Shown: positions 13,888 to 34,042 of the stretch, in pieces | Layout of the letters: the number at the start of each line of letters is the position of its first letter | Position numbering within the stretch: position 1 is the stretch's first letter | Sequence record: LR756500.1 | Length of the DNA: 64,000 bases | Direction: 5' to 3' (one strand) | Notes under the pieces: model-generated | Database searches by the model: none | Seen by the model: only the letters and a program-made list of their open reading frames with translations | Told to the model about the DNA's origin: nothing | Translations under genes and position numbers: made by a program

Positions 13888-15849
13888 TTATTTATATATT
13901 TCTTTTTTTAATTCATCATAAAATGAATGTAATACTGTTGGAACCATAACTTTAAATACTTCATAATTATCATCTTTAATTGCAGTTCTAACAACCGATG
14001 CACTAATATCTTCATCTGCTCTTTTAATTTCAAATAACTCAAAATCATTTAGCATATTTAATTCATCTTTATATTTATCTATTTGTATTTTGAATGTTTT
14101 TAATCTATCTGTACCTACTCCCCATTTTAGAGGTTCATATTCAGGACGTAATGAATTAAATATTTTATCTACTGATGCTGAATCAATAATAAATACATTT
14201 TCTAGAAACTCATAATTTAATTTTAGTGCATCAAACATTCTTAATTGTAATTCTTTATCGAAAGGATTTAAATCTTTATCTTGTGAAGTCTCTTTACCTT
14301 TAACTATAAAAATTATAACAGGGAGTTTATTTGTCATATGTAATTTATTTAAAACTTTTATATGACCTAATGTAAAAGGTTGAAATCTTCCTACAAATAT
14401 ATTTACTTGTTGTTTTCCATGTTCTTTATCTTTAATATTTAATGCTTCGAATGTTGAATCTTCTAATTTTTCTATATTACTTTCTAATTTATTTAATTCT
14501 TTTTTTAAAAAATCAATAGTTGGAATATTTATAGGATTACTTTCTATTGTTATAGTTATACTATTTTCAGAAACGTCTTCCTCTTCTTCATATATATTAT
14601 CATTCATTTCTTTCATAATAATATAATCACCAAAAGTTTTAAATGAATCATCAGATTCAGCTTCTGTTGCATCTTTTATTTTTCCTATTATAATATTAAT
14701 TTCTTTAATAATAGGTTCTGTTAATACATTGGTAGTCTTTTTTCTCTTTTTTCTTAATGATGATAAAAATATTTTAAATAAATCTTTTAATTTATCTGAT
14801 GAATTTAAATATTCTTTTGTCTTTTGATTTTTAATTAATTCAATATTTAAATCAAATTCTTTCTTTTTTGCAAAACTTGGAGTTTCAAAATCTATATCTT
14901 TGTATTTATCTATATTTTTATTAACATACTTATTAAATATATCACAAATAATTTCAATATATCTTTCATCAGGTTTAATAGATAAAATGCCAACAGATAA
15001 AACGGATTTATTTCTTTCTATAAATTCAATTATATCTAATAATATTATTGAATAAATATCTTTAATAGTTCTAGTATCTTGTACTTTATTTTTCTCTTGT
15101 ATATTTTTTATAATTGGATCTATTATTTTTCCAATATATGTTTTATCATTGTGCTCATCAAAAAATTTAAATACAATTGAATCTATAGGTTTAATTAAAT
15201 CATTATTTAATGTAGTTTTTTTAAGAGATGGATTTAAAATACTTATAATATATTTAGTAAATGAATCTGTTCCAAATATATCACCTAAAGAATCTTTATC
15301 AGTTTTTATAAAATCTTTTATTTGATTTTTTTGCTTATCATTTAATACACCTTCAAAAATAATAGGAGGACCTTGTACTTCTAGTTTATTAGCCCATTCA
15401 TTTAAAATTTTAGAATTATCTATAACTTTAATTGTTTTATTTTGATTATTTTTTACCAATATATGTGTTAATACTAAATTATTAGTAGGTAAATTATCAT
15501 AAACAATATTTACTGGACTTTTATTTACAAAATATTGAAAACTAAATCTCCAATTATCTGGTATTTCTTTTAAAACAGATTTATCAATTTTATTAACAAA
15601 ATGATTTCTAACAGATTCATAATATATCATTAATGTTCTATCTATAATACTTAATGGAATTCTATCATCCCTTTTAAATATATCTATTGGGTCATTAACG
15701 ATATTTTTTCTATCAGCATCTATTTTTTGAACATATACTGTAGATCCATCTAAATTTTCACTTATAATCGTATATTTTTCGAGTAATTCTTCAATAAACT
15801 TATTACCCTGTTCTTTATAAATATCTTTTATTTCTTGTATTCCTGCCAT
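13888..15849 (-). CDS. Two-domain protein: degenerate ligase-like N-domain plus C-terminal HIGH-family nucleotidyltransferase (cytidylyltransferase-like)
   Basis: N-terminal ISENLDG (KxDG motif with K replaced by N). C-terminal FVGRFQPFTLGH, VGTDR and ISASVVR. Confidence 0.7.
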   Translation of the reverse strand: MAGIQEIKDIYKEQGNKFIEELLEKYTIISENLDGSTVYVQKIDADRKNIVNDPIDIFKRDDRIPLSIIDRTLMIYYESVRNHFVNKIDKSVLKEIPDNWRFSFQYFVNKSPVNIVYDNLPTNNLVLTHILVKNNQNKTIKVIDNSKILNEWANKLEVQGPPIIFEGVLNDKQKNQIKDFIKTDKDSLGDIFGTDSFTKYIISILNPSLKKTTLNNDLIKPIDSIVFKFFDEHNDKTYIGKIIDPIIKNIQEKNKVQDTRTIKDIYSIILLDIIEFIERNKSVLSVGILSIKPDERYIEIICDIFNKYVNKNIDKYKDIDFETPSFAKKKEFDLNIELIKNQKTKEYLNSSDKLKDLFKIFLSSLRKKRKKTTNVLTEPIIKEINIIIGKIKDATEAESDDSFKTFGDYIIMKEMNDNIYEEEEDVSENSITITIESNPINIPTIDFLKKELNKLESNIEKLEDSTFEALNIKDKEHGKQQVNIFVGRFQPFTLGHIKVLNKLHMTNKLPVIIFIVKGKETSQDKDLNPFDKELQLRMFDALKLNYEFLENVFIIDSASVDKIFNSLRPEYEPLKWGVGTDRLKTFKIQIDKYKDELNMLNDFELFEIKRADEDISASVVRTAIKDDNYEVFKVMVPTVLHSFYDELKKEIYK

Positions 15850-15880: not shown

Positions 15881-17146
15881 TCAAAAACGAAGCAAACCCA
15901 TAATTTGGTTTACAGGAGAAAAGGATCCCGTTAATTTATATCTCTTTGAATTATAAACAAATACAATTCCTTCAGAAGGCATTATTGAATCAAATCCACC
16001 TAAAGCTTCTATTTTATTTAAGTTTAATTGTAATACATCTAATAATCCTTTTCCACCAGTATTTTCTATTTCTTTAATCTTTTTATCTAAATTATCTTTA
16101 ATAACTTTCACTGTATCATTAGAATTAACGGATAAAAATCCACTTATATTTTTTAAAACAGTAACACCTAATTCTGTAAAAATACTCTCAAATTTATCTC
16201 TTATATTTTGTCTAATATTTTTAATTGAATCAGATTTTTCTAGCATTTTAATAAATCCTAAATTATTTAGTTCTAATTCTTTTATTGATATAATAGTTCC
16301 ATTTTTAAAAGCTAAACGTTTAGCTGCTCGTTCAAACACATCTCCGTCAAAATCAGTTTCATGTTTAGCAATACTATTTAAAATAATTTTTTTCCAAAAT
16401 TCTATATGCCATTCTTCTAATGTAGAATTATCATTCATATCCATTGAATCTCTAATATCATCAATTTTTTTATGAAAATAATTTTGTTTAACAGAAAAAT
16501 CGTTATGCTTAGAAATATTTAAATAATTTGGTTCATGAACTTTAAATATGCTATTAATACTTTTATTTACTAAATTTATTACATCAACAATATTTTTAGA
16601 TATTTTATTATTTTCATCAATTGGATTTCCATCAAAATCATAACTTATAAATCCATGCATAATTATTTTAGGTGAATCATATACAATAACATTTGGAGAA
16701 CTTGGATATATTATTTCAATATTCATAAACTTTTTACCTGTTTCAAATTCAACATCTAATATTGATTGATCTATTTTAGAAAATATTTTATTTAATTCGG
16801 TTATAGCTAATGAAAATGCTTTAGATAATTCTCCTCTATTTTCAAATTTTTGTATTAATTGATCTACTGTTAAAGCATCTTTACCATAATTTTTTAAATG
16901 ACCTTTATTTCTTGCTGTAAATAATTGTCCATGTTTCCATGTTATTGATAAAGCATATCCATCCAATTTTTCAGATATTAATTCTTCTTTATCTAAATAT
17001 CCTCCAAGTGCTCTATCAACTATCGTTTTTAAATCTTTAAATGTTAAACTATAATCTTCAAAAGGATGATTTAAATGTCCGTAACTTCCACCTTCTAAAA
17101 TTAAATTTTCATTTAAAAATTCTTCATAAGATTTTAAAAATTTCAT
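15881..17146 (-). CDS. DUF6267-like ATP-dependent ligase/nucleotidyltransferase-fold protein with capsid-targeting-like tag
   Basis: GHLNHPFED, ISEKLDG (ligase motif I) and C-terminal EGIVFVYNSKRYKLTGSF (ligase motifs IV/V). N-terminus is MKFLKSYEEFLNE. Confidence 0.7.
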   Translation of the reverse strand: MKFLKSYEEFLNENLILEGGSYGHLNHPFEDYSLTFKDLKTIVDRALGGYLDKEELISEKLDGYALSITWKHGQLFTARNKGHLKNYGKDALTVDQLIQKFENRGELSKAFSLAITELNKIFSKIDQSILDVEFETGKKFMNIEIIYPSSPNVIVYDSPKIIMHGFISYDFDGNPIDENNKISKNIVDVINLVNKSINSIFKVHEPNYLNISKHNDFSVKQNYFHKKIDDIRDSMDMNDNSTLEEWHIEFWKKIILNSIAKHETDFDGDVFERAAKRLAFKNGTIISIKELELNNLGFIKMLEKSDSIKNIRQNIRDKFESIFTELGVTVLKNISGFLSVNSNDTVKVIKDNLDKKIKEIENTGGKGLLDVLQLNLNKIEALGGFDSIMPSEGIVFVYNSKRYKLTGSFSPVNQIMGLLRF

Positions 17147-17154
17147 TTATAAGA

Positions 17155-17709
17155 TTATTTTATGCATTCAATTATTAAATCACATTTATGTGGTCTAATT
17201 TCTAAATTGTTTAAATATTCAATTTCACTTTTTCTATAATCAGTTTCAAATGCATTTTTAAAACCAATATCTTTAACAGTTCCTATTAAATGATCAGCAT
17301 CCCAAATATATTGATGTCCCCATTTTTTCATTCCTTCATTCATTAAATCAGCAGCACAAGAAGGAGTCCATCCTACTTCACTCCAATATTCTAAATCATT
17401 TTCTAAATATTTTGTTGCTAATGTTTTTAAATTTGGCATACTCATTCTCATTCTACACCCAGGTTTTAAAACTCTAAAACATTCATTTAAAAAAGTGATA
17501 GCAGTTTCTTTGGGTAAATGTTCCATGAAGTGTTCAGAAAAAATACAATCAACTGAACTATCCTTATATGGTAATTTAGGAGCAGTCCAGTTGATTATAT
17601 TTTTTTTATTAGCTTTATCTAAATTATGCCATCCATTCATAGCGTTTGGACCTGCACCTATATTTAATCTAATAGCATCTGTAGGATCAATATCAACGAC
17701 AGTAGTTAC
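17155..17709 (-). CDS. Class I SAM-dependent methyltransferase (type 11-like); the frame extends upstream of the annotated ATG
   Basis: Track ORF 17155..17640 has LPYKDSSVDCIFSEHFMEHL and ECFRVLKPG. Motif I (RLNIGAGP) lies in the same frame 5' of that ATG, and no ATG/GTG/TTG precedes it before the in-frame stop. Confidence 0.75.
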   Translation of the reverse strand, partial: VTTVVDIDPTDAIRLNIGAGPNAMNGWHNLDKANKKNIINWTAPKLPYKDSSVDCIFSEHFMEHLPKETAITFLNECFRVLKPGCRMRMSMPNLKTLATKYLENDLEYWSEVGWTPSCAADLMNEGMKKWGHQYIWDADHLIGTVKDIGFKNAFETDYRKSEIEYLNNLEIRPHKCDLIIECIK

Positions 17710-18569
17710 TTTTTTTTTGAATATTCGTCGTTTAATTCTTCTAATCTATGTTGTTTATAAAAAGTTAAGGCATCTTTAGATTCCCAGTCAGGTAACATTG
17801 AATATGCTTTTTCATATATCATATGAATATCAGATTCTGTATTTAATTTAGCAAATATTTTTTCATTAAGATGAGTATACTTTGTTAAAAATTTATCTAC
17901 TTGATTACTATCAAATACTTTATCTTTTTTGCCTTTACATGCTTCTATAATTTTTGCATCAAAATCTTCTTTTACTTTGCTATCACCTTTCCATTCAGAT
18001 TTAATTTCATCCCAGAATTTTTTCTTTTTTTCTGGATCTAATTGCATTGGAGAATTAACATTATATTTTTTTAATTTACTCTTAAAAAAATCTTTATATT
18101 CTTCTTCATTAATTACTGCTTCTTTTAATTGATCTTTTTCAATTGCATCAGGAACTTTTTGATCAGCTGCATTAGTTATTTTTTTATCAGCTTCAGTATT
18201 TACAACAACTGGATCAATTTTAATTTGATCAGTAGCAGTAGCTGGAGTTTCTTTTACAACATCAATTGGATCAGGAACTTTTTGATCAGCTGCATTAGTT
18301 ATTTTTTTATCAGCTTCAGTATTTACAACTTTAGGATCAATTTGGCCTTCAATTTTATTTGGAAGTTCAGCTTCTTTTTTCTTTGCAGTTAAACCTTTAT
18401 GAATTTCATCATAAAATTTTTTTCTATCATCATCACTTAGATTACTTAAATCTTTAATTTGAAATGCTTTCATTACATCATTAAATATTCCTGCAATAGC
18501 ATCAGCTTCAAGAATAGAAGTTTCTTTAAACTTATTATAAATGTCAGACATTTTACCGATTTTATTCAT
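17706..18569 (-). CDS. Putative head-associated/internal protein with internal duplication
   Basis: Two similar charged helical units (FNDVMKAFQIK...KKFYDEI and YKDFFKSKLKKYNV...KKFWDEI) flank a duplicated linker. The gene ends in an A9-G-TAA slippery context. Confidence 0.6.
   Translation of the reverse strand: MNKIGKMSDIYNKFKETSILEADAIAGIFNDVMKAFQIKDLSNLSDDDRKKFYDEIHKGLTAKKKEAELPNKIEGQIDPKVVNTEADKKITNAADQKVPDPIDVVKETPATATDQIKIDPVVVNTEADKKITNAADQKVPDAIEKDQLKEAVINEEEYKDFFKSKLKKYNVNSPMQLDPEKKKKFWDEIKSEWKGDSKVKEDFDAKIIEACKGKKDKVFDSNQVDKFLTKYTHLNEKIFAKLNTESDIHMIYEKAYSMLPDWESKDALTFYKQHRLEELNDEYSKKK
18147..18329. repeat. Identical 60-bp direct repeat (18147-18206 and 18270-18329)
   Basis: atcaggaactttttgatcagctgcattagttatttttttatcagcttcagtatttacaac occurs twice, encoding VVNTEADKKITNAADQKVPD. 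Confidence 0.9.
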
Positions 18570-23762: not shown

Positions 23763-24230
23763 TTATCTATTTAATTCATCTGATAATTCCATTCTTCTTT
23801 TTATCGCAAATCCTAAATTATCAAGAGTCTTAACAACTTCTTGATAATATTCAATATGTGATTCAATAATTTTTTGTTGTCTTCTTAATAAAGTTATATC
23901 GGCAGCAACAAATTTACTTGTTTCTCCGCCATTAAGTTTAAGATCATATTCACTATCTGATCTTCTATAATATCTATATTGTTGTTTAAAGTAAAAATCA
24001 TATCTACTTTGGACTTTATATAAACTTAATTTAAGTTCAGCCATTTTATCTGTTAATTGATGCCTATAAGATAACATAAAAATTTGAGCTTCTGCCACCT
24101 TATTGATATCTTTAATAGATTCAATTAACGAAATAATTTTTTGATTCCAGCTTGCTCTACTTTTATTTACTCTATCTTCTAATTGAGTATTAGCATCTTC
24201 TAACTCAGTTTTATTAATTATATTTGACAT
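23763..24230 (-). CDS. uvsY: UvsY-like recombination mediator
   Basis: 155-aa helical protein with AD.....Q......IEYY..V...L....FAIK ending; lies near uvsW and the SSB. Confidence 0.6.
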   Translation of the reverse strand: MSNIINKTELEDANTQLEDRVNKSRASWNQKIISLIESIKDINKVAEAQIFMLSYRHQLTDKMAELKLSLYKVQSRYDFYFKQQYRYYRRSDSEYDLKLNGGETSKFVAADITLLRRQQKIIESHIEYYQEVVKTLDNLGFAIKRRMELSDELNR

Positions 24231-24425
24231 TTAAAATAAACCTTTCTTATTATTTATTTTTTTATTTACTATTTTTAGTTTAATTTGTTTTCTTTTAACT
24301 GGTTCTCCTAAAAATATTTCTTTTGTATCATAATCTATATTAACATTTTCAAAATAATCTATAAATAATTTAAATCTTTTATCTCTTAAATCTTTTTCTT
24401 TAAAAAATTCTTCAATTTCACTCAT
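24231..24425 (-). CDS. Small hypothetical protein
   Basis: 64-aa ORF abutting its neighbours. Confidence 0.5.
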   Translation of the reverse strand: MSEIEEFFKEKDLRDKRFKLFIDYFENVNIDYDTKEIFLGEPVKRKQIKLKIVNKKINNKKGLF

Positions 24426-24433
24426 ATTAATTT

Positions 24434-26152
24434 TTATTTATATTCGATATCATCAAATAAAATAGGTATACGTTTCTTGAATTCATCTAAAAGTGGACGC
24501 ATTAATTCTCTCATTTGAGGATGGGCTGCATTTGCAACTCTTAGTTTAAAAATATGTCTCCAATCTCTAATATTAGTTGACATATTTATTTCAGTCTTTA
24601 ATGAATTTGGTAATACTGATCTTGCTTGTTGTGGAGACCATTTGTAATCATTCATTAATTTATTATAATATTGTTCAGATTTTAACATTGATGTTAACCA
24701 TTGTACATTTACCGAAGGATAATCAAAATCTTTTGCTAAAGCATTAACATCAAATTCTGTATAAATATGTTCTTTAATATCTAACCATTCTGGTATAATA
24801 AAAGTAATATTATCATCTTTACTATAATTACAATAACGGGTACTATTATGAACTATAAATCCATTAGCAATATAATTAGAATATGGTTCTTTCATTTCTA
24901 TATCATAAGTATCTTCTACACCAATATATGTAATACTTATAATTTCATCTATTATTCCTTTAACACCTATATGCCAACCGTGATGTAATAAATTATGACA
25001 ACTACAGCATACTTTTGTAAGATTTATATCTTCATTATTGTTTAGATCTTTATCTTTATGATGAACTTCTAATTTAATATTACTTCCACATAATTCACAT
25101 GAAAATATATTTTCTTTCTTAAATCTTGCTTCATCTCTACCTCTCAGTCCGCCACTCCAATTAGAATTATCTTCTCCAAATCCATTGTTATGATGGTTAA
25201 GCCTTAACGAATTTGCTTGCCTTTTAACTGATACATTATTATCCTCGGTTAATCCTTTATTCCAGACAACTCTCCCATCATTGTACTGTTTTTGTATTGT
25301 ATTTTTAATTTTAATATATGAATCAGCAGTATGATTTTTATTGTACTTATCTTTATCTTTATCATTTTTTCGTTTAACAAAAATATTAAGTGTTTGAAGT
25401 TTAGTAAGAATTGTTCTATATGGAATAGAAAATTCTTCACTAATTTCCGTAGGAGATAACCCAACTATATTATATAATCTAATTAATTCATTATCAGATA
25501 ACGTGCATAAATTAGGTCTGCCATTAACTATAACCTTACTACCAATACTTAAATTTCGTAATTCTTCATATTTGTGAGTACTTGTCAAAAATCTATGAGT
25601 ATTAGTACACTTTATTTTATACCCCAATTTAGTAACAACTTCAAATATTACATTATTACCCTTAAAGAATATAGCATTAAAATGATTAGATACTATTTCA
25701 TTATTTTCATTTATACTTCGTAAAGTTAATGTCTTATTATGAGTTCTGTCATAATTTGTACCATGTTCTTGTCTTTCATATAATTCTTTGATAGTAATAT
25801 TTTTATTAGAGGTTGACTTAATAATAGTATCACCTGTTACACATTCTTGGGCAAAACTAGCTATTCTGTGTCTAACTAATTCATGACTAACTCCTCTATC
25901 ACATGTAAATTTAACAGTAATATTACCACCGAATTCTAACATTGCTTCGTGACCCATTTTAATAAGTTTAGCAATAAGTACTCTTGCTGATATAGCATCT
26001 AAATCATATAATTCACCATTAGGTGTTCTATGACCTATTTCTATTTTACCTTCGCTTTTATAACAAGTTCTAGCCGCTATTTCAATTTCTTTTAAAATAC
26101 TTTCTCCATCAATAGGAGTTAATATTTCATATTTTGATTTGATTAAATTCAT
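24434..26152 (-). CDS. thyX: FAD-dependent thymidylate synthase containing an intein
   Basis: GHEAMLEF, RGVSHELVRHRIASFAQE|intein|STRYCNY, ARSVLPNS and WRHIFKLR...AHPQMR. Confidence 0.92.
   Translation of the reverse strand: MNLIKSKYEILTPIDGESILKEIEIAARTCYKSEGKIEIGHRTPNGELYDLDAISARVLIAKLIKMGHEAMLEFGGNITVKFTCDRGVSHELVRHRIASFAQECVTGDTIIKSTSNKNITIKELYERQEHGTNYDRTHNKTLTLRSINENNEIVSNHFNAIFFKGNNVIFEVVTKLGYKIKCTNTHRFLTSTHKYEELRNLSIGSKVIVNGRPNLCTLSDNELIRLYNIVGLSPTEISEEFSIPYRTILTKLQTLNIFVKRKNDKDKDKYNKNHTADSYIKIKNTIQKQYNDGRVVWNKGLTEDNNVSVKRQANSLRLNHHNNGFGEDNSNWSGGLRGRDEARFKKENIFSCELCGSNIKLEVHHKDKDLNNNEDINLTKVCCSCHNLLHHGWHIGVKGIIDEIISITYIGVEDTYDIEMKEPYSNYIANGFIVHNSTRYCNYSKDDNITFIIPEWLDIKEHIYTEFDVNALAKDFDYPSVNVQWLTSMLKSEQYYNKLMNDYKWSPQQARSVLPNSLKTEINMSTNIRDWRHIFKLRVANAAHPQMRELMRPLLDEFKKRIPILFDDIEYK
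24845..25843 (-). mobile_element. Cis-splicing intein (333 aa) with HNH endonuclease
   Basis: Starts CVTGDT, has block B CTNTHRF, HNH CELCG...LEVHHKD...N....CCSCHNLLH, and ends TYDIEM...YIANGFIVHN|S. Confidence 0.9.
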
Positions 26153-32634: not shown

Positions 32635-34042
32635 TTTTATTTTCCTTTTTAATTTTATCTAGTTTAACTTTTGAAAAACTTACTTTTATATTTACTCTAT
32701 CTCTATAGACATTTACAAATTCTGTTTTAATTTGAATTTTTGAATTATTAAGAGATGTTTCATTTTGGCTTAAAACTGAATTTTCAGAATTAATTTTTTC
32801 AATTTTATTATATATGTGTACTATTTTAGGTGATACACCCATATTTAATTGTTGCATTTTAGGACCATATTTTTTAACATTAAATGATGTTAAAGTAGAT
32901 GTTTTTATTATTTGAGTATTATCTACTCTATTTATAATTCTTAATGCATAATTAATAGTATATGATACTGCAGAGGATGCATTCATTACAACAGGTCTAT
33001 ATATAACAGGCTTATCCCAATATTCTGTTTGTATTAAAGTTTGACGAGTTGTTTCAACAAATTCTGTATCTATTTGTTCCTCTAAAAAAAATTCATGAAA
33101 CACCATATAATTAGAATTTGGCTGATTATTTAATGTTGTAATAAAATCTTCAAATATAATACCGTTATATTCACCATATAATTCATAATAATCGCCTGAT
33201 TCAGATTCTTTTATTTTTGCTACTAATTGTTCAAATTCATCTTTTTGATTAAATGATACAGAATTATTTTCTCTTACAGAAAAATATGTAAATCCATTTT
33301 CCTTTTTAGATTCAAATATTTCTAATAATTTAATATCTATCATTGTAGACTTTAATAAACCTACACCTAAATTTCTATTAGTTGGAGCTATATCAGTTTG
33401 AACGTTTTTAGATGTTAACCTTGAATTTAATGTATCACTACTAATAGGAGGATTTGCTGTATTAGGGCTTAATAAATAATTTACAGCTGGAATTTTAACC
33501 TCAATATATGAAGAATATTCTTTTTCACCAACTATAAATGGATTTGAATTAAATGTTTGATAACTATCAGTTTTTCTATATACTAACGACATCAAATTAA
33601 TAACTGCTCCACCTCTTTGTGTAATAGTAATATTAAAGATATATCCATCTAAGTCACTAAATGTAAAACCTGTTTGTAAATGTATTTTAATTGTATCATA
33701 CTTTATATTAGTTGTAGTAGGACTATCAAAATTTTGAACTAAATTTGTAGTCTTAGTTAAATTAGAATCATAATCTATATAATTTATAGGTAAATCCTTA
33801 TTTAAATAAACATATTTTGAATATTTATTATTTACAGGAATTGCACTTCTATCTCTTATATTACCCATGTCAATAGGTGCACTATCACTATTAAAATAAT
33901 AGTTAGTGTTGGTATATCCATTCGATAATATTTCAACTGGATGAGAATCTACTTCATATGATTCTGGGTTAAGAGTATCAGTATAAATATATTCTATTAA
34001 TATTTGTTTATCTATTTGTACATATTTTGAAGATCTAGCCAT
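32603..34042 (-). CDS. Putative virion structural protein
   Basis: 479-aa beta-rich ORF in the structural cluster. Confidence 0.55.
   Translation of the reverse strand: MARSSKYVQIDKQILIEYIYTDTLNPESYEVDSHPVEILSNGYTNTNYYFNSDSAPIDMGNIRDRSAIPVNNKYSKYVYLNKDLPINYIDYDSNLTKTTNLVQNFDSPTTTNIKYDTIKIHLQTGFTFSDLDGYIFNITITQRGGAVINLMSLVYRKTDSYQTFNSNPFIVGEKEYSSYIEVKIPAVNYLLSPNTANPPISSDTLNSRLTSKNVQTDIAPTNRNLGVGLLKSTMIDIKLLEIFESKKENGFTYFSVRENNSVSFNQKDEFEQLVAKIKESESGDYYELYGEYNGIIFEDFITTLNNQPNSNYMVFHEFFLEEQIDTEFVETTRQTLIQTEYWDKPVIYRPVVMNASSAVSYTINYALRIINRVDNTQIIKTSTLTSFNVKKYGPKMQQLNMGVSPKIVHIYNKIEKINSENSVLSQNETSLNNSKIQIKTEFVNVYRDRVNIKVSFSKVKLDKIKKENKNEFVKQNTKK

What the first reader, a model, noticed from the sequence alone, without database searches (positions are those of the whole stretch)
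17641..17750. Methyltransferase reachable only via a -1 slip at A_AAA_AAG: programmed frameshift, phase variation or error
Seen: ORF 17706..18569 ends TCA AAA AAA AAG TAA (A9 run, 17710-17718). The -1 frame continues GTA ACT ACT GTC...RLNIGAGPNAMNGW, supplying the SAM-binding motif I missing from the annotated 17640 start, and it has no ATG/GTG/TTG of its own. Established: A_AAA_AAG is the classic bacterial -1 frameshift heptamer (dnaX, IS elements). The result would be a short head-type protein plus a minor fusion product carrying a methyltransferase.
Basis: partly seen in the sequence, partly recalled or inferred. Interest (0 to 1): 0.7.

Follow-up and report, generated by a model that had tools for sequence, protein, structure and literature searches.

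The report
Start-less methyltransferase behind an A9 slip site
In an uncultivated 430-kb groundwater phage, an intact methyltransferase gene has no start signal of its own and begins, one base out of frame, exactly at a run of nine A's that ends the gene before it, so it is probably made only as a rare slip-generated fusion protein; this is a credible but unproven case of a known kind of recoding.

Summary
On the minus strand, ORF-A (18569..17706, 287 aa) ends TCA AAA AAA AAG TAA, with A9 at 17718..17710. The -1 frame then runs 184 codons through a class I SAM methyltransferase. Its glycine-loop motif I (LNIGAG, 17667..17650) lies upstream of the first canonical start, ATG 17640.

- **Not an assembly error:** four assemblies and a second sample all show A9.
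- **No start region:** every candidate start has a leader scoring below about 92-100% of real leaders in this genome.
- **Frame switch at the tract:** the -1 frame looks non-coding before it and strongly coding straight after it.
- **Tract is rare:** sense A>=9 runs are ten-fold depleted in coding DNA (7 vs 70 expected).
- **No PRF stimulators:** there is no downstream RNA structure, the genome does not use Shine-Dalgarno sites, and in-frame A_AAA_AAG is not avoided.
- **No conservation:** relatives of both proteins are stand-alone, and a syntenic phage lacks the methyltransferase.

Best reading (about 0.5): one translational unit, with a minor 471-aa fusion made by slippage at the tract. RNA polymerase adding an A is favoured, and a ribosomal -1 slip before the stop is possible. 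Rivals are a dead remnant, non-canonical initiation, and DNA-level phase variation. It is a new member of a known kind.

The parts
17706..18569 (-). ORF-A, 287 aa. A helical phage protein of unknown function with a widespread ~45-aa module (res ~150-198, with a weaker copy near res 40-60). It ends ...EELNDEYSKKK then TAA.
   Evidence: phrog_28651 hit. 400 library hits to the module. Closest relatives P0012 and P0013 end at ...RLEELK* and ...RLDEINQ*. AF2 model is all-helical with a disordered repeat linker.
17710..17718 (-). A9 tract (T9 on the + strand). Proposed slip site; one extra A in the mRNA, or a -1 ribosome slip, joins ORF-A to the methyltransferase frame.
   Evidence: Identical in four assemblies and in a second sample. 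Sense A>=9 runs: 7 observed vs 70 expected.
17709..17715 (-). Heptamer A_AAA_AAG in the ORF-A frame.
   Evidence: Genome-wide, in-frame copies number 44 vs 45.8 expected, so it is not avoided. The phage carries only tRNA-Lys(UUU).
17706..17708 (-). TAA stop of ORF-A, directly 3' of the heptamer and followed by C.
   Evidence: TAAC context occurs in 29 of 602 ORFs.
17674..17709 (-). Linker in the -1 frame (VTTVVDIDPTDA). It is coding-like and not leader-like.
   Evidence: GC is 39% against a leader mean of 15.7%. Coding-vs-leader log-odds is +14.6 bits; 0 of 295 leaders reach this, and it is at the 97th percentile of coding windows. Just upstream, the -1 frame scores -4.4, the 0.2nd percentile. 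Residues 1-9 are disordered in the model.
17650..17667 (-). Motif I (LNIGAG): strand beta-1 plus the glycine loop of the SAM-binding fold, upstream of the first canonical start.
   Evidence: Alignments A1 and A3, with G18 and G20 invariant. AF2 places beta-1 at residues 14-17.
17155..17709 (-). Methyltransferase reading frame, 184 aa from the GTA at the slip site. Class I SAM-dependent, Methyltransf_11-like.
   Evidence: Pfam 37.7 bits vs cut-off 21.2. pLDDT 85.5. Foldseek matches small-molecule SAM methyltransferases. It keeps all 20 columns that are invariant in 9 sequences.
17638..17640 (-). ATG used by gene callers. It is an internal Met; a product starting here would lack beta-1 and the glycine loop.
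   Evidence: Leader score -11.5, below all 254 trusted starts. Relatives have Met at the same column.
17746..17748 (-). TAG that closes the -1 frame upstream. A TAA lies three codons further up, so TAG recoding would not help.
17676..17678 (-). Out-of-frame ATG (ORF-A frame, 4-codon mini-ORF). It lies where relatives have Met1, one base out of register.
   Evidence: Leader score -7.6.

Best explanation
ORF-A and the methyltransferase form one translational unit joined at the A9 tract. Normal decoding gives the 287-aa ORF-A, which stops at TAA. The methyltransferase has no initiation region of its own.

It is made only when the frame moves -1 at the tract, giving a minor 471-aa fusion (...EYSKKK-VTTVVDIDPTDAIRLNIGAG...). 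A short disordered linker precedes an intact class I SAM methyltransferase.

Two routes give the same protein:
- **(a) RNA polymerase slips on the T9 template and adds one A.** I favour this route, because selection in this genome acts on run length and not on the heptamer.
- **(b) The ribosome slips -1 on A_AAA_AAG, or on AAG with the stop codon in the A site.** The phage's only tRNA-Lys is UUU.

Shown: the anatomy, the lack of a start region, the frame switch of the coding signature at the tract, and the intactness of the enzyme.

Inferred: that slippage happens, its rate, and that the fusion is useful. The likely history is a methyltransferase (+421-aa gene) cassette inserted after an ORF-A that used to end ...EELK.
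For: - **Sequence and frames:**
- **Same A9 in four assemblies (~50x) and in a second sample:**
- **Leader model from 254 trusted starts:** ATG 17640 scores -11.5 (below all), ATT 17673 -7.3 (0.4th percentile), ATT 17691 -5.9, and ATG 17678 -7.6. ORF-A's own ATG scores +6.2.
- **Coding signature:** the -1 frame scores -4.4 bits just before the tract (0.2nd percentile of coding). It scores +14.6 bits in the 36 nt after it, which no real leader reaches.
- **Length-dependent purge of sense A runs:** A7 0.69, A8 0.33, A9 0.10, A10 0.03 of expectation. KKK is coded AAA-AAA-AAA 1 time in 84 and AAA-AAA-AAG 3 times in 84. This is the only such run at a gene end and the only one where two long frames meet.
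- **Enzyme intact:** all family-invariant residues are kept, the model is confident, and motif I is needed for the fold.
- **Natural fusions exist:** the family also occurs as the C-terminal part of 400-1100-aa phage proteins.
- **Literature (PMC5009743):** runs of 9 A/T give efficient RNA polymerase slippage in bacteria. A_AAA_AAG is shifty where a single tRNA-Lys reads both codons. Candidate dnaX genes have been proposed in which the zero-frame stop directly follows the shift site.
Against: - There is no downstream stem-loop or pseudoknot; the folds are weaker than shuffles (z +0.6 to +1.3). There is no Shine-Dalgarno-type stimulator.
- In-frame A_AAA_AAG is not depleted, so the heptamer alone may be weakly shifty in this host.
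- There is no conservation. No relative carries this junction. The closest ORF-A relatives are stand-alone and end at the same place. The closest methyltransferase relatives are stand-alone with Met 3-5 residues before motif I, and 29 of 29 viral relatives have a canonical start.
- A9 tracts also occur as leader A tracts at -7..-19 of real starts (2 of 602 genes). Here the tract would fit a start at about 17703, where there is none.
- There are no RNA or protein data, and raw reads were not available.
Confidence: 0.5

Rival explanations
1. Dead or dying remnant. The methyltransferase cassette lost its start, was captured without one, or was an in-frame A10 fusion that lost one A. Any slip product is negligible and unselected, and the A9 tract is a former leader A tract or a chance feature at a tolerant gene end.
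For: Both partners are stand-alone in all relatives, and the syntenic phage L007 lacks the methyltransferase and the 421-aa gene. An out-of-frame ATG (17678) sits where relatives have Met1, one base out of register. The A9 geometry matches leader tracts (-7..-15) for a missing start near 17703. A coding signature persists for a long time after inactivation. There are no PRF stimulators.
Against: 184 codons are still open in a stop-rich 24% GC genome. Every residue invariant in the family is retained and the model is confident. A>=9 tracts are rare in leaders (2 of 602) and in genes (7 vs 70), so the coincidence with the exact frame junction is unlikely, at roughly 0.3-0.5% per junction. A9 would still give slipped transcripts by known polymerase behaviour.
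Confidence: 0.25
2. The methyltransferase is translated on its own from a non-canonical start (ATT 17673, 17691, 17736 or 17745), possibly by ribosomes re-initiating after the TAA.
For: ATT 17673 lies two codons before the motif I leucine, close to where relatives start. There is a precedent in the same genome: two TnpB copies have no canonical start for 116 codons. Their N-terminus aligns with residue ~1 of solved TnpB-like proteins, and ATT at codon 3 follows a leader scoring at the 99.6th percentile.
Against: Unlike TnpB, none of these ATT codons has a leader typical of this genome. Their scores are -7.3, -5.9, -0.5 and -1.9, which is the 0.4th to 15th percentile. The 36 nt before ATT 17673 are coding-like and 39% GC, against a leader mean of 15.7%. 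The -1 frame upstream of the tract is not coding-like, which argues against the 17736 and 17745 starts.
Confidence: 0.15
3. The tract length differs at the DNA level. Either the assembly is wrong (true A10, a plain in-frame fusion), or the phage population is a mix of A9 and A10 genomes (phase variation by replication slippage).
For: Homopolymers are indel hot spots. A10 gives a clean in-frame fusion. The purge of long A runs fits DNA-level instability as well as it fits RNA-level slippage.
Against: A9 appears in the NCBI, ENA, Logan and JGI assemblies at about 50x, and in a 222-nt contig from a second sample with no difference. No indel is reported at the tract (table 4). Contigs hide minor alleles, so a minority A10 population is not excluded.
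Confidence: 0.07

Closest known systems
Thermus thermophilus dnaX; also Shigella mxiE/spa genes and Citrobacter rodentium tssM (transcriptional slippage on A/T runs)
   Same: A run of nine A/T in the coding strand. RNA polymerase adds bases, so that a share of mRNAs reads through into another frame and two products come from one locus (PMC5009743; PMC4256274 by title and abstract).
   Different: Those genes are single genes with conserved tracts and measured mRNA heterogeneity. Here two proteins of separate origin are joined, there is no conservation, and there are no RNA data.
E. coli dnaX and IS3-family orfAB (-1 programmed ribosomal frameshifting on A_AAA_AAG)
   Same: The identical heptamer in the zero frame. 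The downstream frame has no start of its own. The product is a fusion. Only a tRNA-Lys(UUU) is present.
   Different: dnaX and IS3 have a downstream stem-loop or pseudoknot and often an upstream Shine-Dalgarno-like element. Neither is present here. Here the zero-frame stop follows the site at once, as in the candidate dnaX genes in other bacteria that the review mentions.
Phage T7 gene 10A/10B and lambda G/GT (phage -1 frameshifts near the end of a gene)
   Same: A slip just before the stop of an abundant protein gives a minor C-terminally extended form (own knowledge; the Xu et al. 2004 tail-chaperone frameshift as cited in PMC10885494).
   Different: Those extensions are structural and conserved across phages. 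Here the extension is a whole enzyme, and the site is a singleton in a replication or nucleotide-metabolism neighbourhood.
Poly(A)-tract rescue of frameshifted genes in AT-rich endosymbionts (Buchnera, Blochmannia)
   Same: A very AT-rich genome in which a frameshift at a poly(A) tract is corrected in part of the transcripts by polymerase infidelity (PMC5009743).
   Different: In the endosymbionts the tracts interrupt ancestral single genes under weak selection. This phage genome purges such tracts strongly, so a retained one is more notable.
Stand-alone and fused members of the same methyltransferase family in phage contigs
   Same: 35-43% identity, the same motifs, and the same C-terminal ...E.RP...DLI.E..K end. 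Some are C-terminal domains of long proteins (L019, L025, L064, L073).
   Different: All 29 examined have a canonical start in frame before motif I. None follows an ORF-A-like protein.

Membership tests
-1 programmed ribosomal frameshift (dnaX / IS3 type) | X_XXY_YYZ heptamer in the zero frame | tested here: met
   A_AAA_AAG at 17715..17709 in the ORF-A frame.
-1 programmed ribosomal frameshift (dnaX / IS3 type) | The -1 frame is open across the site and codes a product that lacks its own initiation | tested here: met
   Open from 17745 to 17158. No canonical start before motif I, and all candidate leaders score poorly.
-1 programmed ribosomal frameshift (dnaX / IS3 type) | Stimulatory RNA structure 5-9 nt downstream | tested here: not met
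   Four windows fold no better than shuffles, z +0.6 to +1.3.
-1 programmed ribosomal frameshift (dnaX / IS3 type) | Upstream Shine-Dalgarno-like stimulator | tested here: not met
   No GGAGG-like element upstream. The genome as a whole does not use Shine-Dalgarno sites; GGAG occurs in 0.7% of leaders.
-1 programmed ribosomal frameshift (dnaX / IS3 type) | Site and frame arrangement conserved in relatives | tested here: inconclusive
   No relative with this junction exists in the collections searched. Relatives of each part are stand-alone.
Programmed transcriptional slippage | Homopolymeric A or T run of about 9 or more in the gene | tested here: met
   A9 at 17718..17710. The threshold is taken from PMC5009743.
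Programmed transcriptional slippage | Adding one base restores a long continuous frame | tested here: met
   A10 would read TCA AAA AAA AAA GTA..., giving 287+184 codons.
Programmed transcriptional slippage | mRNA population heterogeneous in tract length while the DNA is uniform | not testable with these tools
   No RNA run holds the locus, and the DNA runs are kept only as contigs.
Class I SAM-dependent methyltransferase (Methyltransf_11-like) | Profile match above the curated cut-off | tested here: met
   PF08241 scores 37.7 bits against a cut-off of 21.2. phrog_6636 'methyltransferase', E 8.5e-12.
Class I SAM-dependent methyltransferase (Methyltransf_11-like) | Motif I glycine loop after strand beta-1, and a Rossmann-like fold | tested here: met
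   Met only in the -1-frame extension. LNIGAG aligns with the family motif. The AF2 model has pLDDT 85.5 with beta-1 at residues 14-17. Foldseek probability is 1.00 to SAM methyltransferases. The ATG-17640 product lacks both elements.
Class I SAM-dependent methyltransferase (Methyltransf_11-like) | Methyl transfer activity and substrate | not testable with these tools
   The nearest structures are small-molecule methyltransferases at 11-18% identity. No substrate can be assigned.
Phase-variable gene (simple-sequence contingency locus) | Tract length polymorphic in DNA among reads or strains | tested here: inconclusive
   There is no variation among four assemblies and two samples, but only consensus contigs could be laid.
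Pseudogene | Loss of conserved residues or internal stops | tested here: not met
   There are no stops in 184 codons, and all 20 invariant columns are kept. The lack of a start is the only defect.

The most novel reading that the evidence does not exclude
The junction is a selected recoding device. A methyltransferase cassette, captured without any start signal, is expressed solely through run-length-dependent slippage at an A9 tract. That tract is one the phage otherwise purges from its genes. A fixed small share of a replication-module protein (ORF-A) would then carry a tethered methyltransferase. This would be an enzyme delivered as a slip-generated fusion in a huge phage, with transcriptional and ribosomal routes converging on the same product.
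Probability: 0.3. Interest if true: 0.6.

Novelty: new member of a known kind. Interest (0 to 1): 0.45.

Why it matters
If real, this adds a non-structural, enzyme-bearing recoding event to the short list known in phages. It would also show that huge phages can express captured genes without any initiation signal, by using a slippery tract.

It matters for annotation too. The called 161-aa 'methyltransferase' starts after the SAM-binding loop, so it is a mis-call either way.

The genome-wide result is a clean, testable signature that slippage on A runs is a real hazard in this virus-host system. Sense A runs are purged steeply from eight bases upward, and AAG is used as an interrupter inside Lys-Lys-Lys. 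This signature can be used to flag the few retained tracts as candidates for recoding.

Tried and rejected
- **Assembly error:** rejected as far as consensus data go.
- **Raw-read or RNA support:** not obtainable. All runs are kept as contigs and no RNA run holds the locus.
- **Close relatives with the same junction:** none in viral contigs, metagenome contigs or two protein libraries.
- **ORF-A module fused to a methyltransferase elsewhere:** ten long hits have no Pfam domain at all.
- **Downstream stimulatory structure:** none. **Terminator between the genes:** none. Promoter-like hits are fewer than in shuffles.
- **TAG recoding to extend the -1 frame upstream:** the genome has a tRNA(CUA), but the idea is useless here because a TAA lies three codons further up.
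- **Second copy of the methyltransferase in the genome:** none.
- **Function of ORF-A by fold:** no significant match in BFVD. 'Head protein' is rejected for lack of any support.
- **Substrate of the methyltransferase:** only generic matches.
- **RNA-ligase idea for the 421-aa neighbour (KxDG-like ISEKLDG):** no support from PDB, Pfam, PHROGs or NCBIfam sequence searches.
- **Control gene ending A_AAA_AAG_TAA (G000 32862..33500):** its -1 frame stops after three codons.

Full report
**What the window is**

The window has 24% GC, and nearly all its genes lie on the minus strand. It is part of an uncultivated huge phage from a groundwater metagenome. The same sequence is held as LR756500.1 (462 kb) and as a 429-kb JGI contig. 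The phage has 25 tRNAs and a tmRNA.

Its genes do not use Shine-Dalgarno sites. Instead, starts are preceded by an A-rich leader that peaks at -14..-10.

**The observation**

ORF-A (18569..17706, 287 aa) ends TCA AAA AAA AAG TAA on the minus strand. The A9 run is at 17718..17710, and the heptamer A_AAA_AAG is in frame.

The -1 frame is open from 17745. It reads ...FKKK-VTTVVDIDPTDAIRLNIGAGPNAMNGW... and continues for 184 codons from the GTA that overlaps the last base of AAG. There is no ATG, GTG or TTG before ATG 17640.

The frame encodes a Methyltransf_11-like class I SAM methyltransferase. Alignment with relatives shows that LNIGAG is the family's motif I. It also shows that the Met at 17640 is an internal residue, which several relatives share.

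An AlphaFold model has pLDDT 85.5. It places strand beta-1 at residues 14-17 and the glycine loop at 18-20. Both lie before the called ATG, so the 161-aa called protein would lack the core of the SAM site. Foldseek finds only generic small-molecule SAM methyltransferases.

**Is it an error?**

The NCBI, ENA, Logan and JGI assemblies all have A9, at about 50x word depth. A 222-nt contig from a second sample of the same study spans the tract without any difference. Only contigs could be laid, so minor A10 alleles cannot be excluded.

**Does the methyltransferase have its own start?**

I built a leader model from 254 trusted ATG starts. Real leaders score 2.1 +/- 2.9.

| Candidate start | Leader score | Position among real starts |
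|---|---|---|
| ATG 17640 | -11.5 | below every real start |
| ATT 17673 | -7.3 | 0.4th percentile |
| ATT 17691 | -5.9 | about 1-2nd percentile |
| out-of-frame ATG 17678 | -7.6 | 0.4th percentile |
| ORF-A's own ATG | +6.2 | 96th percentile |

ATT starts are not absurd in this genome. Two TnpB copies elsewhere have 116 start-less codons, and ATT at codon 3 follows a top-scoring leader. The methyltransferase has nothing comparable.

**Where does coding in the methyltransferase frame begin?**

I used a codon log-odds of coding against leader.
- The 36 nt after the tract score +14.6 bits. That is the 97th percentile of real coding windows, and none of 295 leaders reaches it in any frame.
- The 36 nt of the same frame before the tract score -4.4, the 0.2nd percentile of coding.
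- The linker is 39% GC, against 15.7% for leaders.

So coding switches frame at the tract with no spacer in between. This is the signature of a single translational unit with a frame transition.

**Is the tract special?**

Measured against synonymous-codon shuffles, sense-strand A runs are purged more steeply as length rises:

| Run length | Observed / expected |
|---|---|
| A6 | 0.91 |
| A7 | 0.69 |
| A8 | 0.33 |
| A9 | 0.10 (7 vs 70) |
| A10 | 0.03 |

- T runs behave similarly.
- Of 84 Lys-Lys-Lys triplets, one is AAA-AAA-AAA and three are AAA-AAA-AAG. AAG is used as an interrupter.
- By contrast, in-frame A_AAA_AAG is at expectation, 44 vs 45.8.
- The tract here is the only sense A>=9 run at a gene end, and the only one where two long frames meet.
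- A9 tracts in leaders are also rare, 2 of 602 genes.

**Stimulators**

No downstream structure is present; the folds are weaker than shuffles. There is no Shine-Dalgarno-like element and no terminator between the genes. The stop codon directly follows the heptamer, and the phage's only tRNA-Lys is UUU.

The Atkins review (PMC5009743) gives the relevant background:
- A_AAA_AAG is shifty where one tRNA-Lys reads both codons.
- Runs of 9 A/T give efficient RNA polymerase slippage with extra bases.
- It notes candidate dnaX genes in which the zero-frame stop lies directly after the shift site.

**History**

The closest ORF-A relatives are P0012 (214 aa) and P0013 (212 aa), at 38-40% identity. Both are stand-alone and end ...RLEELK* and ...RLDEINQ*, where ORF-A reads ...RLEELNDEYSKKK*.

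In the syntenic contig L007 the order is helicase, then the ORF-A homologue, then the homologue of the window's 653-aa gene (42% identity). That contig has no methyltransferase and no 421-aa gene.

Methyltransferase relatives are mostly stand-alone, with Met 3-5 residues before motif I. All 29 viral relatives examined have a canonical start, and some are C-terminal domains of long proteins.

So the methyltransferase, probably together with the 421-aa gene, is a lineage-specific insertion after ORF-A. The junction is not ancestral.

**Verdict**

The best reading is a slip-dependent minor fusion of 471 aa. Run-length-dependent slippage, by RNA polymerase on A9, is the favoured route, and a ribosomal -1 slip before the stop is a second route (confidence about 0.5).

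Three points cannot be shown here: whether slippage occurs, at what rate, and whether the fusion is selected.

Rivals:
- A remnant without function (0.25).
- Own initiation at a non-canonical codon, or re-initiation (0.15).
- DNA-level tract variation or error (0.07).

The mechanism class is known, and the case is a singleton, hence the moderate interest score.

Noticed in passing
window 18139-18220 and 18262-18343: An 82-bp direct repeat (94% identity, spacing 123) lies inside ORF-A and encodes VVNTEADKKITNAADQKVPD twice, within a predicted disordered linker. The independent ENA and Logan assemblies break at this repeat.
   Followed up: partly
G000 151012-152229 and 24226-25443 (outside the window): Two copies of a full-length TnpB (OrfB_IS605 + Cas12f1-like TNB, 405 codons) have no ATG/GTG/TTG in the first 116 codons. 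ATT at codon 3 follows a leader at the 99.6th percentile, which suggests ATT initiation in this phage or host.
   Followed up: partly
G000 373380-373448, 357239-357649 and 356794-356869 (outside the window): The phage carries a tRNA with anticodon CUA (an amber suppressor, called 'Pyl' by ARAGORN), a tmRNA, and tRNA-Lys(UUU) as its only lysine tRNA. In my crude gene set, 29 of 602 ORFs end in TAG. I did not test whether TAG is recoded late in infection.
   Followed up: no
whole genome G000: There is a steep, length-dependent purge of sense A and T runs from 8 bases upward. AAG is used as an interrupter in Lys-Lys-Lys (AAA-AAG-AAA 40 of 84, AAA-AAA-AAA 1 of 84).
   Followed up: yes
G000 389791-390606 (outside the window): One 271-codon gene keeps both an in-frame A9 and an in-frame A10. 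It is the only gene with two such tracts and another candidate for slippage-based variation.
   Followed up: no
window 15881-17146 and 13888-15849: The 421-aa and 653-aa neighbours share an ISE[KN]LDG motif reminiscent of nucleotidyl-transferase motif I. The 653-aa protein has a C-terminal cytidylyl/NMN-adenylyltransferase-like domain and is conserved next to the ORF-A homologue in L007. The 421-aa protein has no database match.
   Followed up: partly
window 17976-18122 (ORF-A residues ~150-198) and L012 2501-2647: A ~45-aa helical module (consensus YQ.FF...L.KYGV.SP.EL..E.KKKFF..I...W, phrog_28651) occurs in more than 400 mostly phage proteins of 58-900 aa. It also occurs inside the 936-aa protein annotated 'DNA ligase 1' of Tenacibaculum phage pT24. 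Its function is unknown.
   Followed up: partly
window 17676-17678: An ATG in the ORF-A frame opens a 4-codon mini-ORF. It lies where methyltransferase relatives have Met1, one base out of register with the methyltransferase frame. It may be the scar of a 1-nt deletion.
   Followed up: partly
whole genome G000 and window: Translation starts lack Shine-Dalgarno motifs and have an A-rich leader (TAAAA/AATAA), as in Bacteroidota. The distant module matches are to Tenacibaculum phages. Together these hint at a Bacteroidota host.
   Followed up: no
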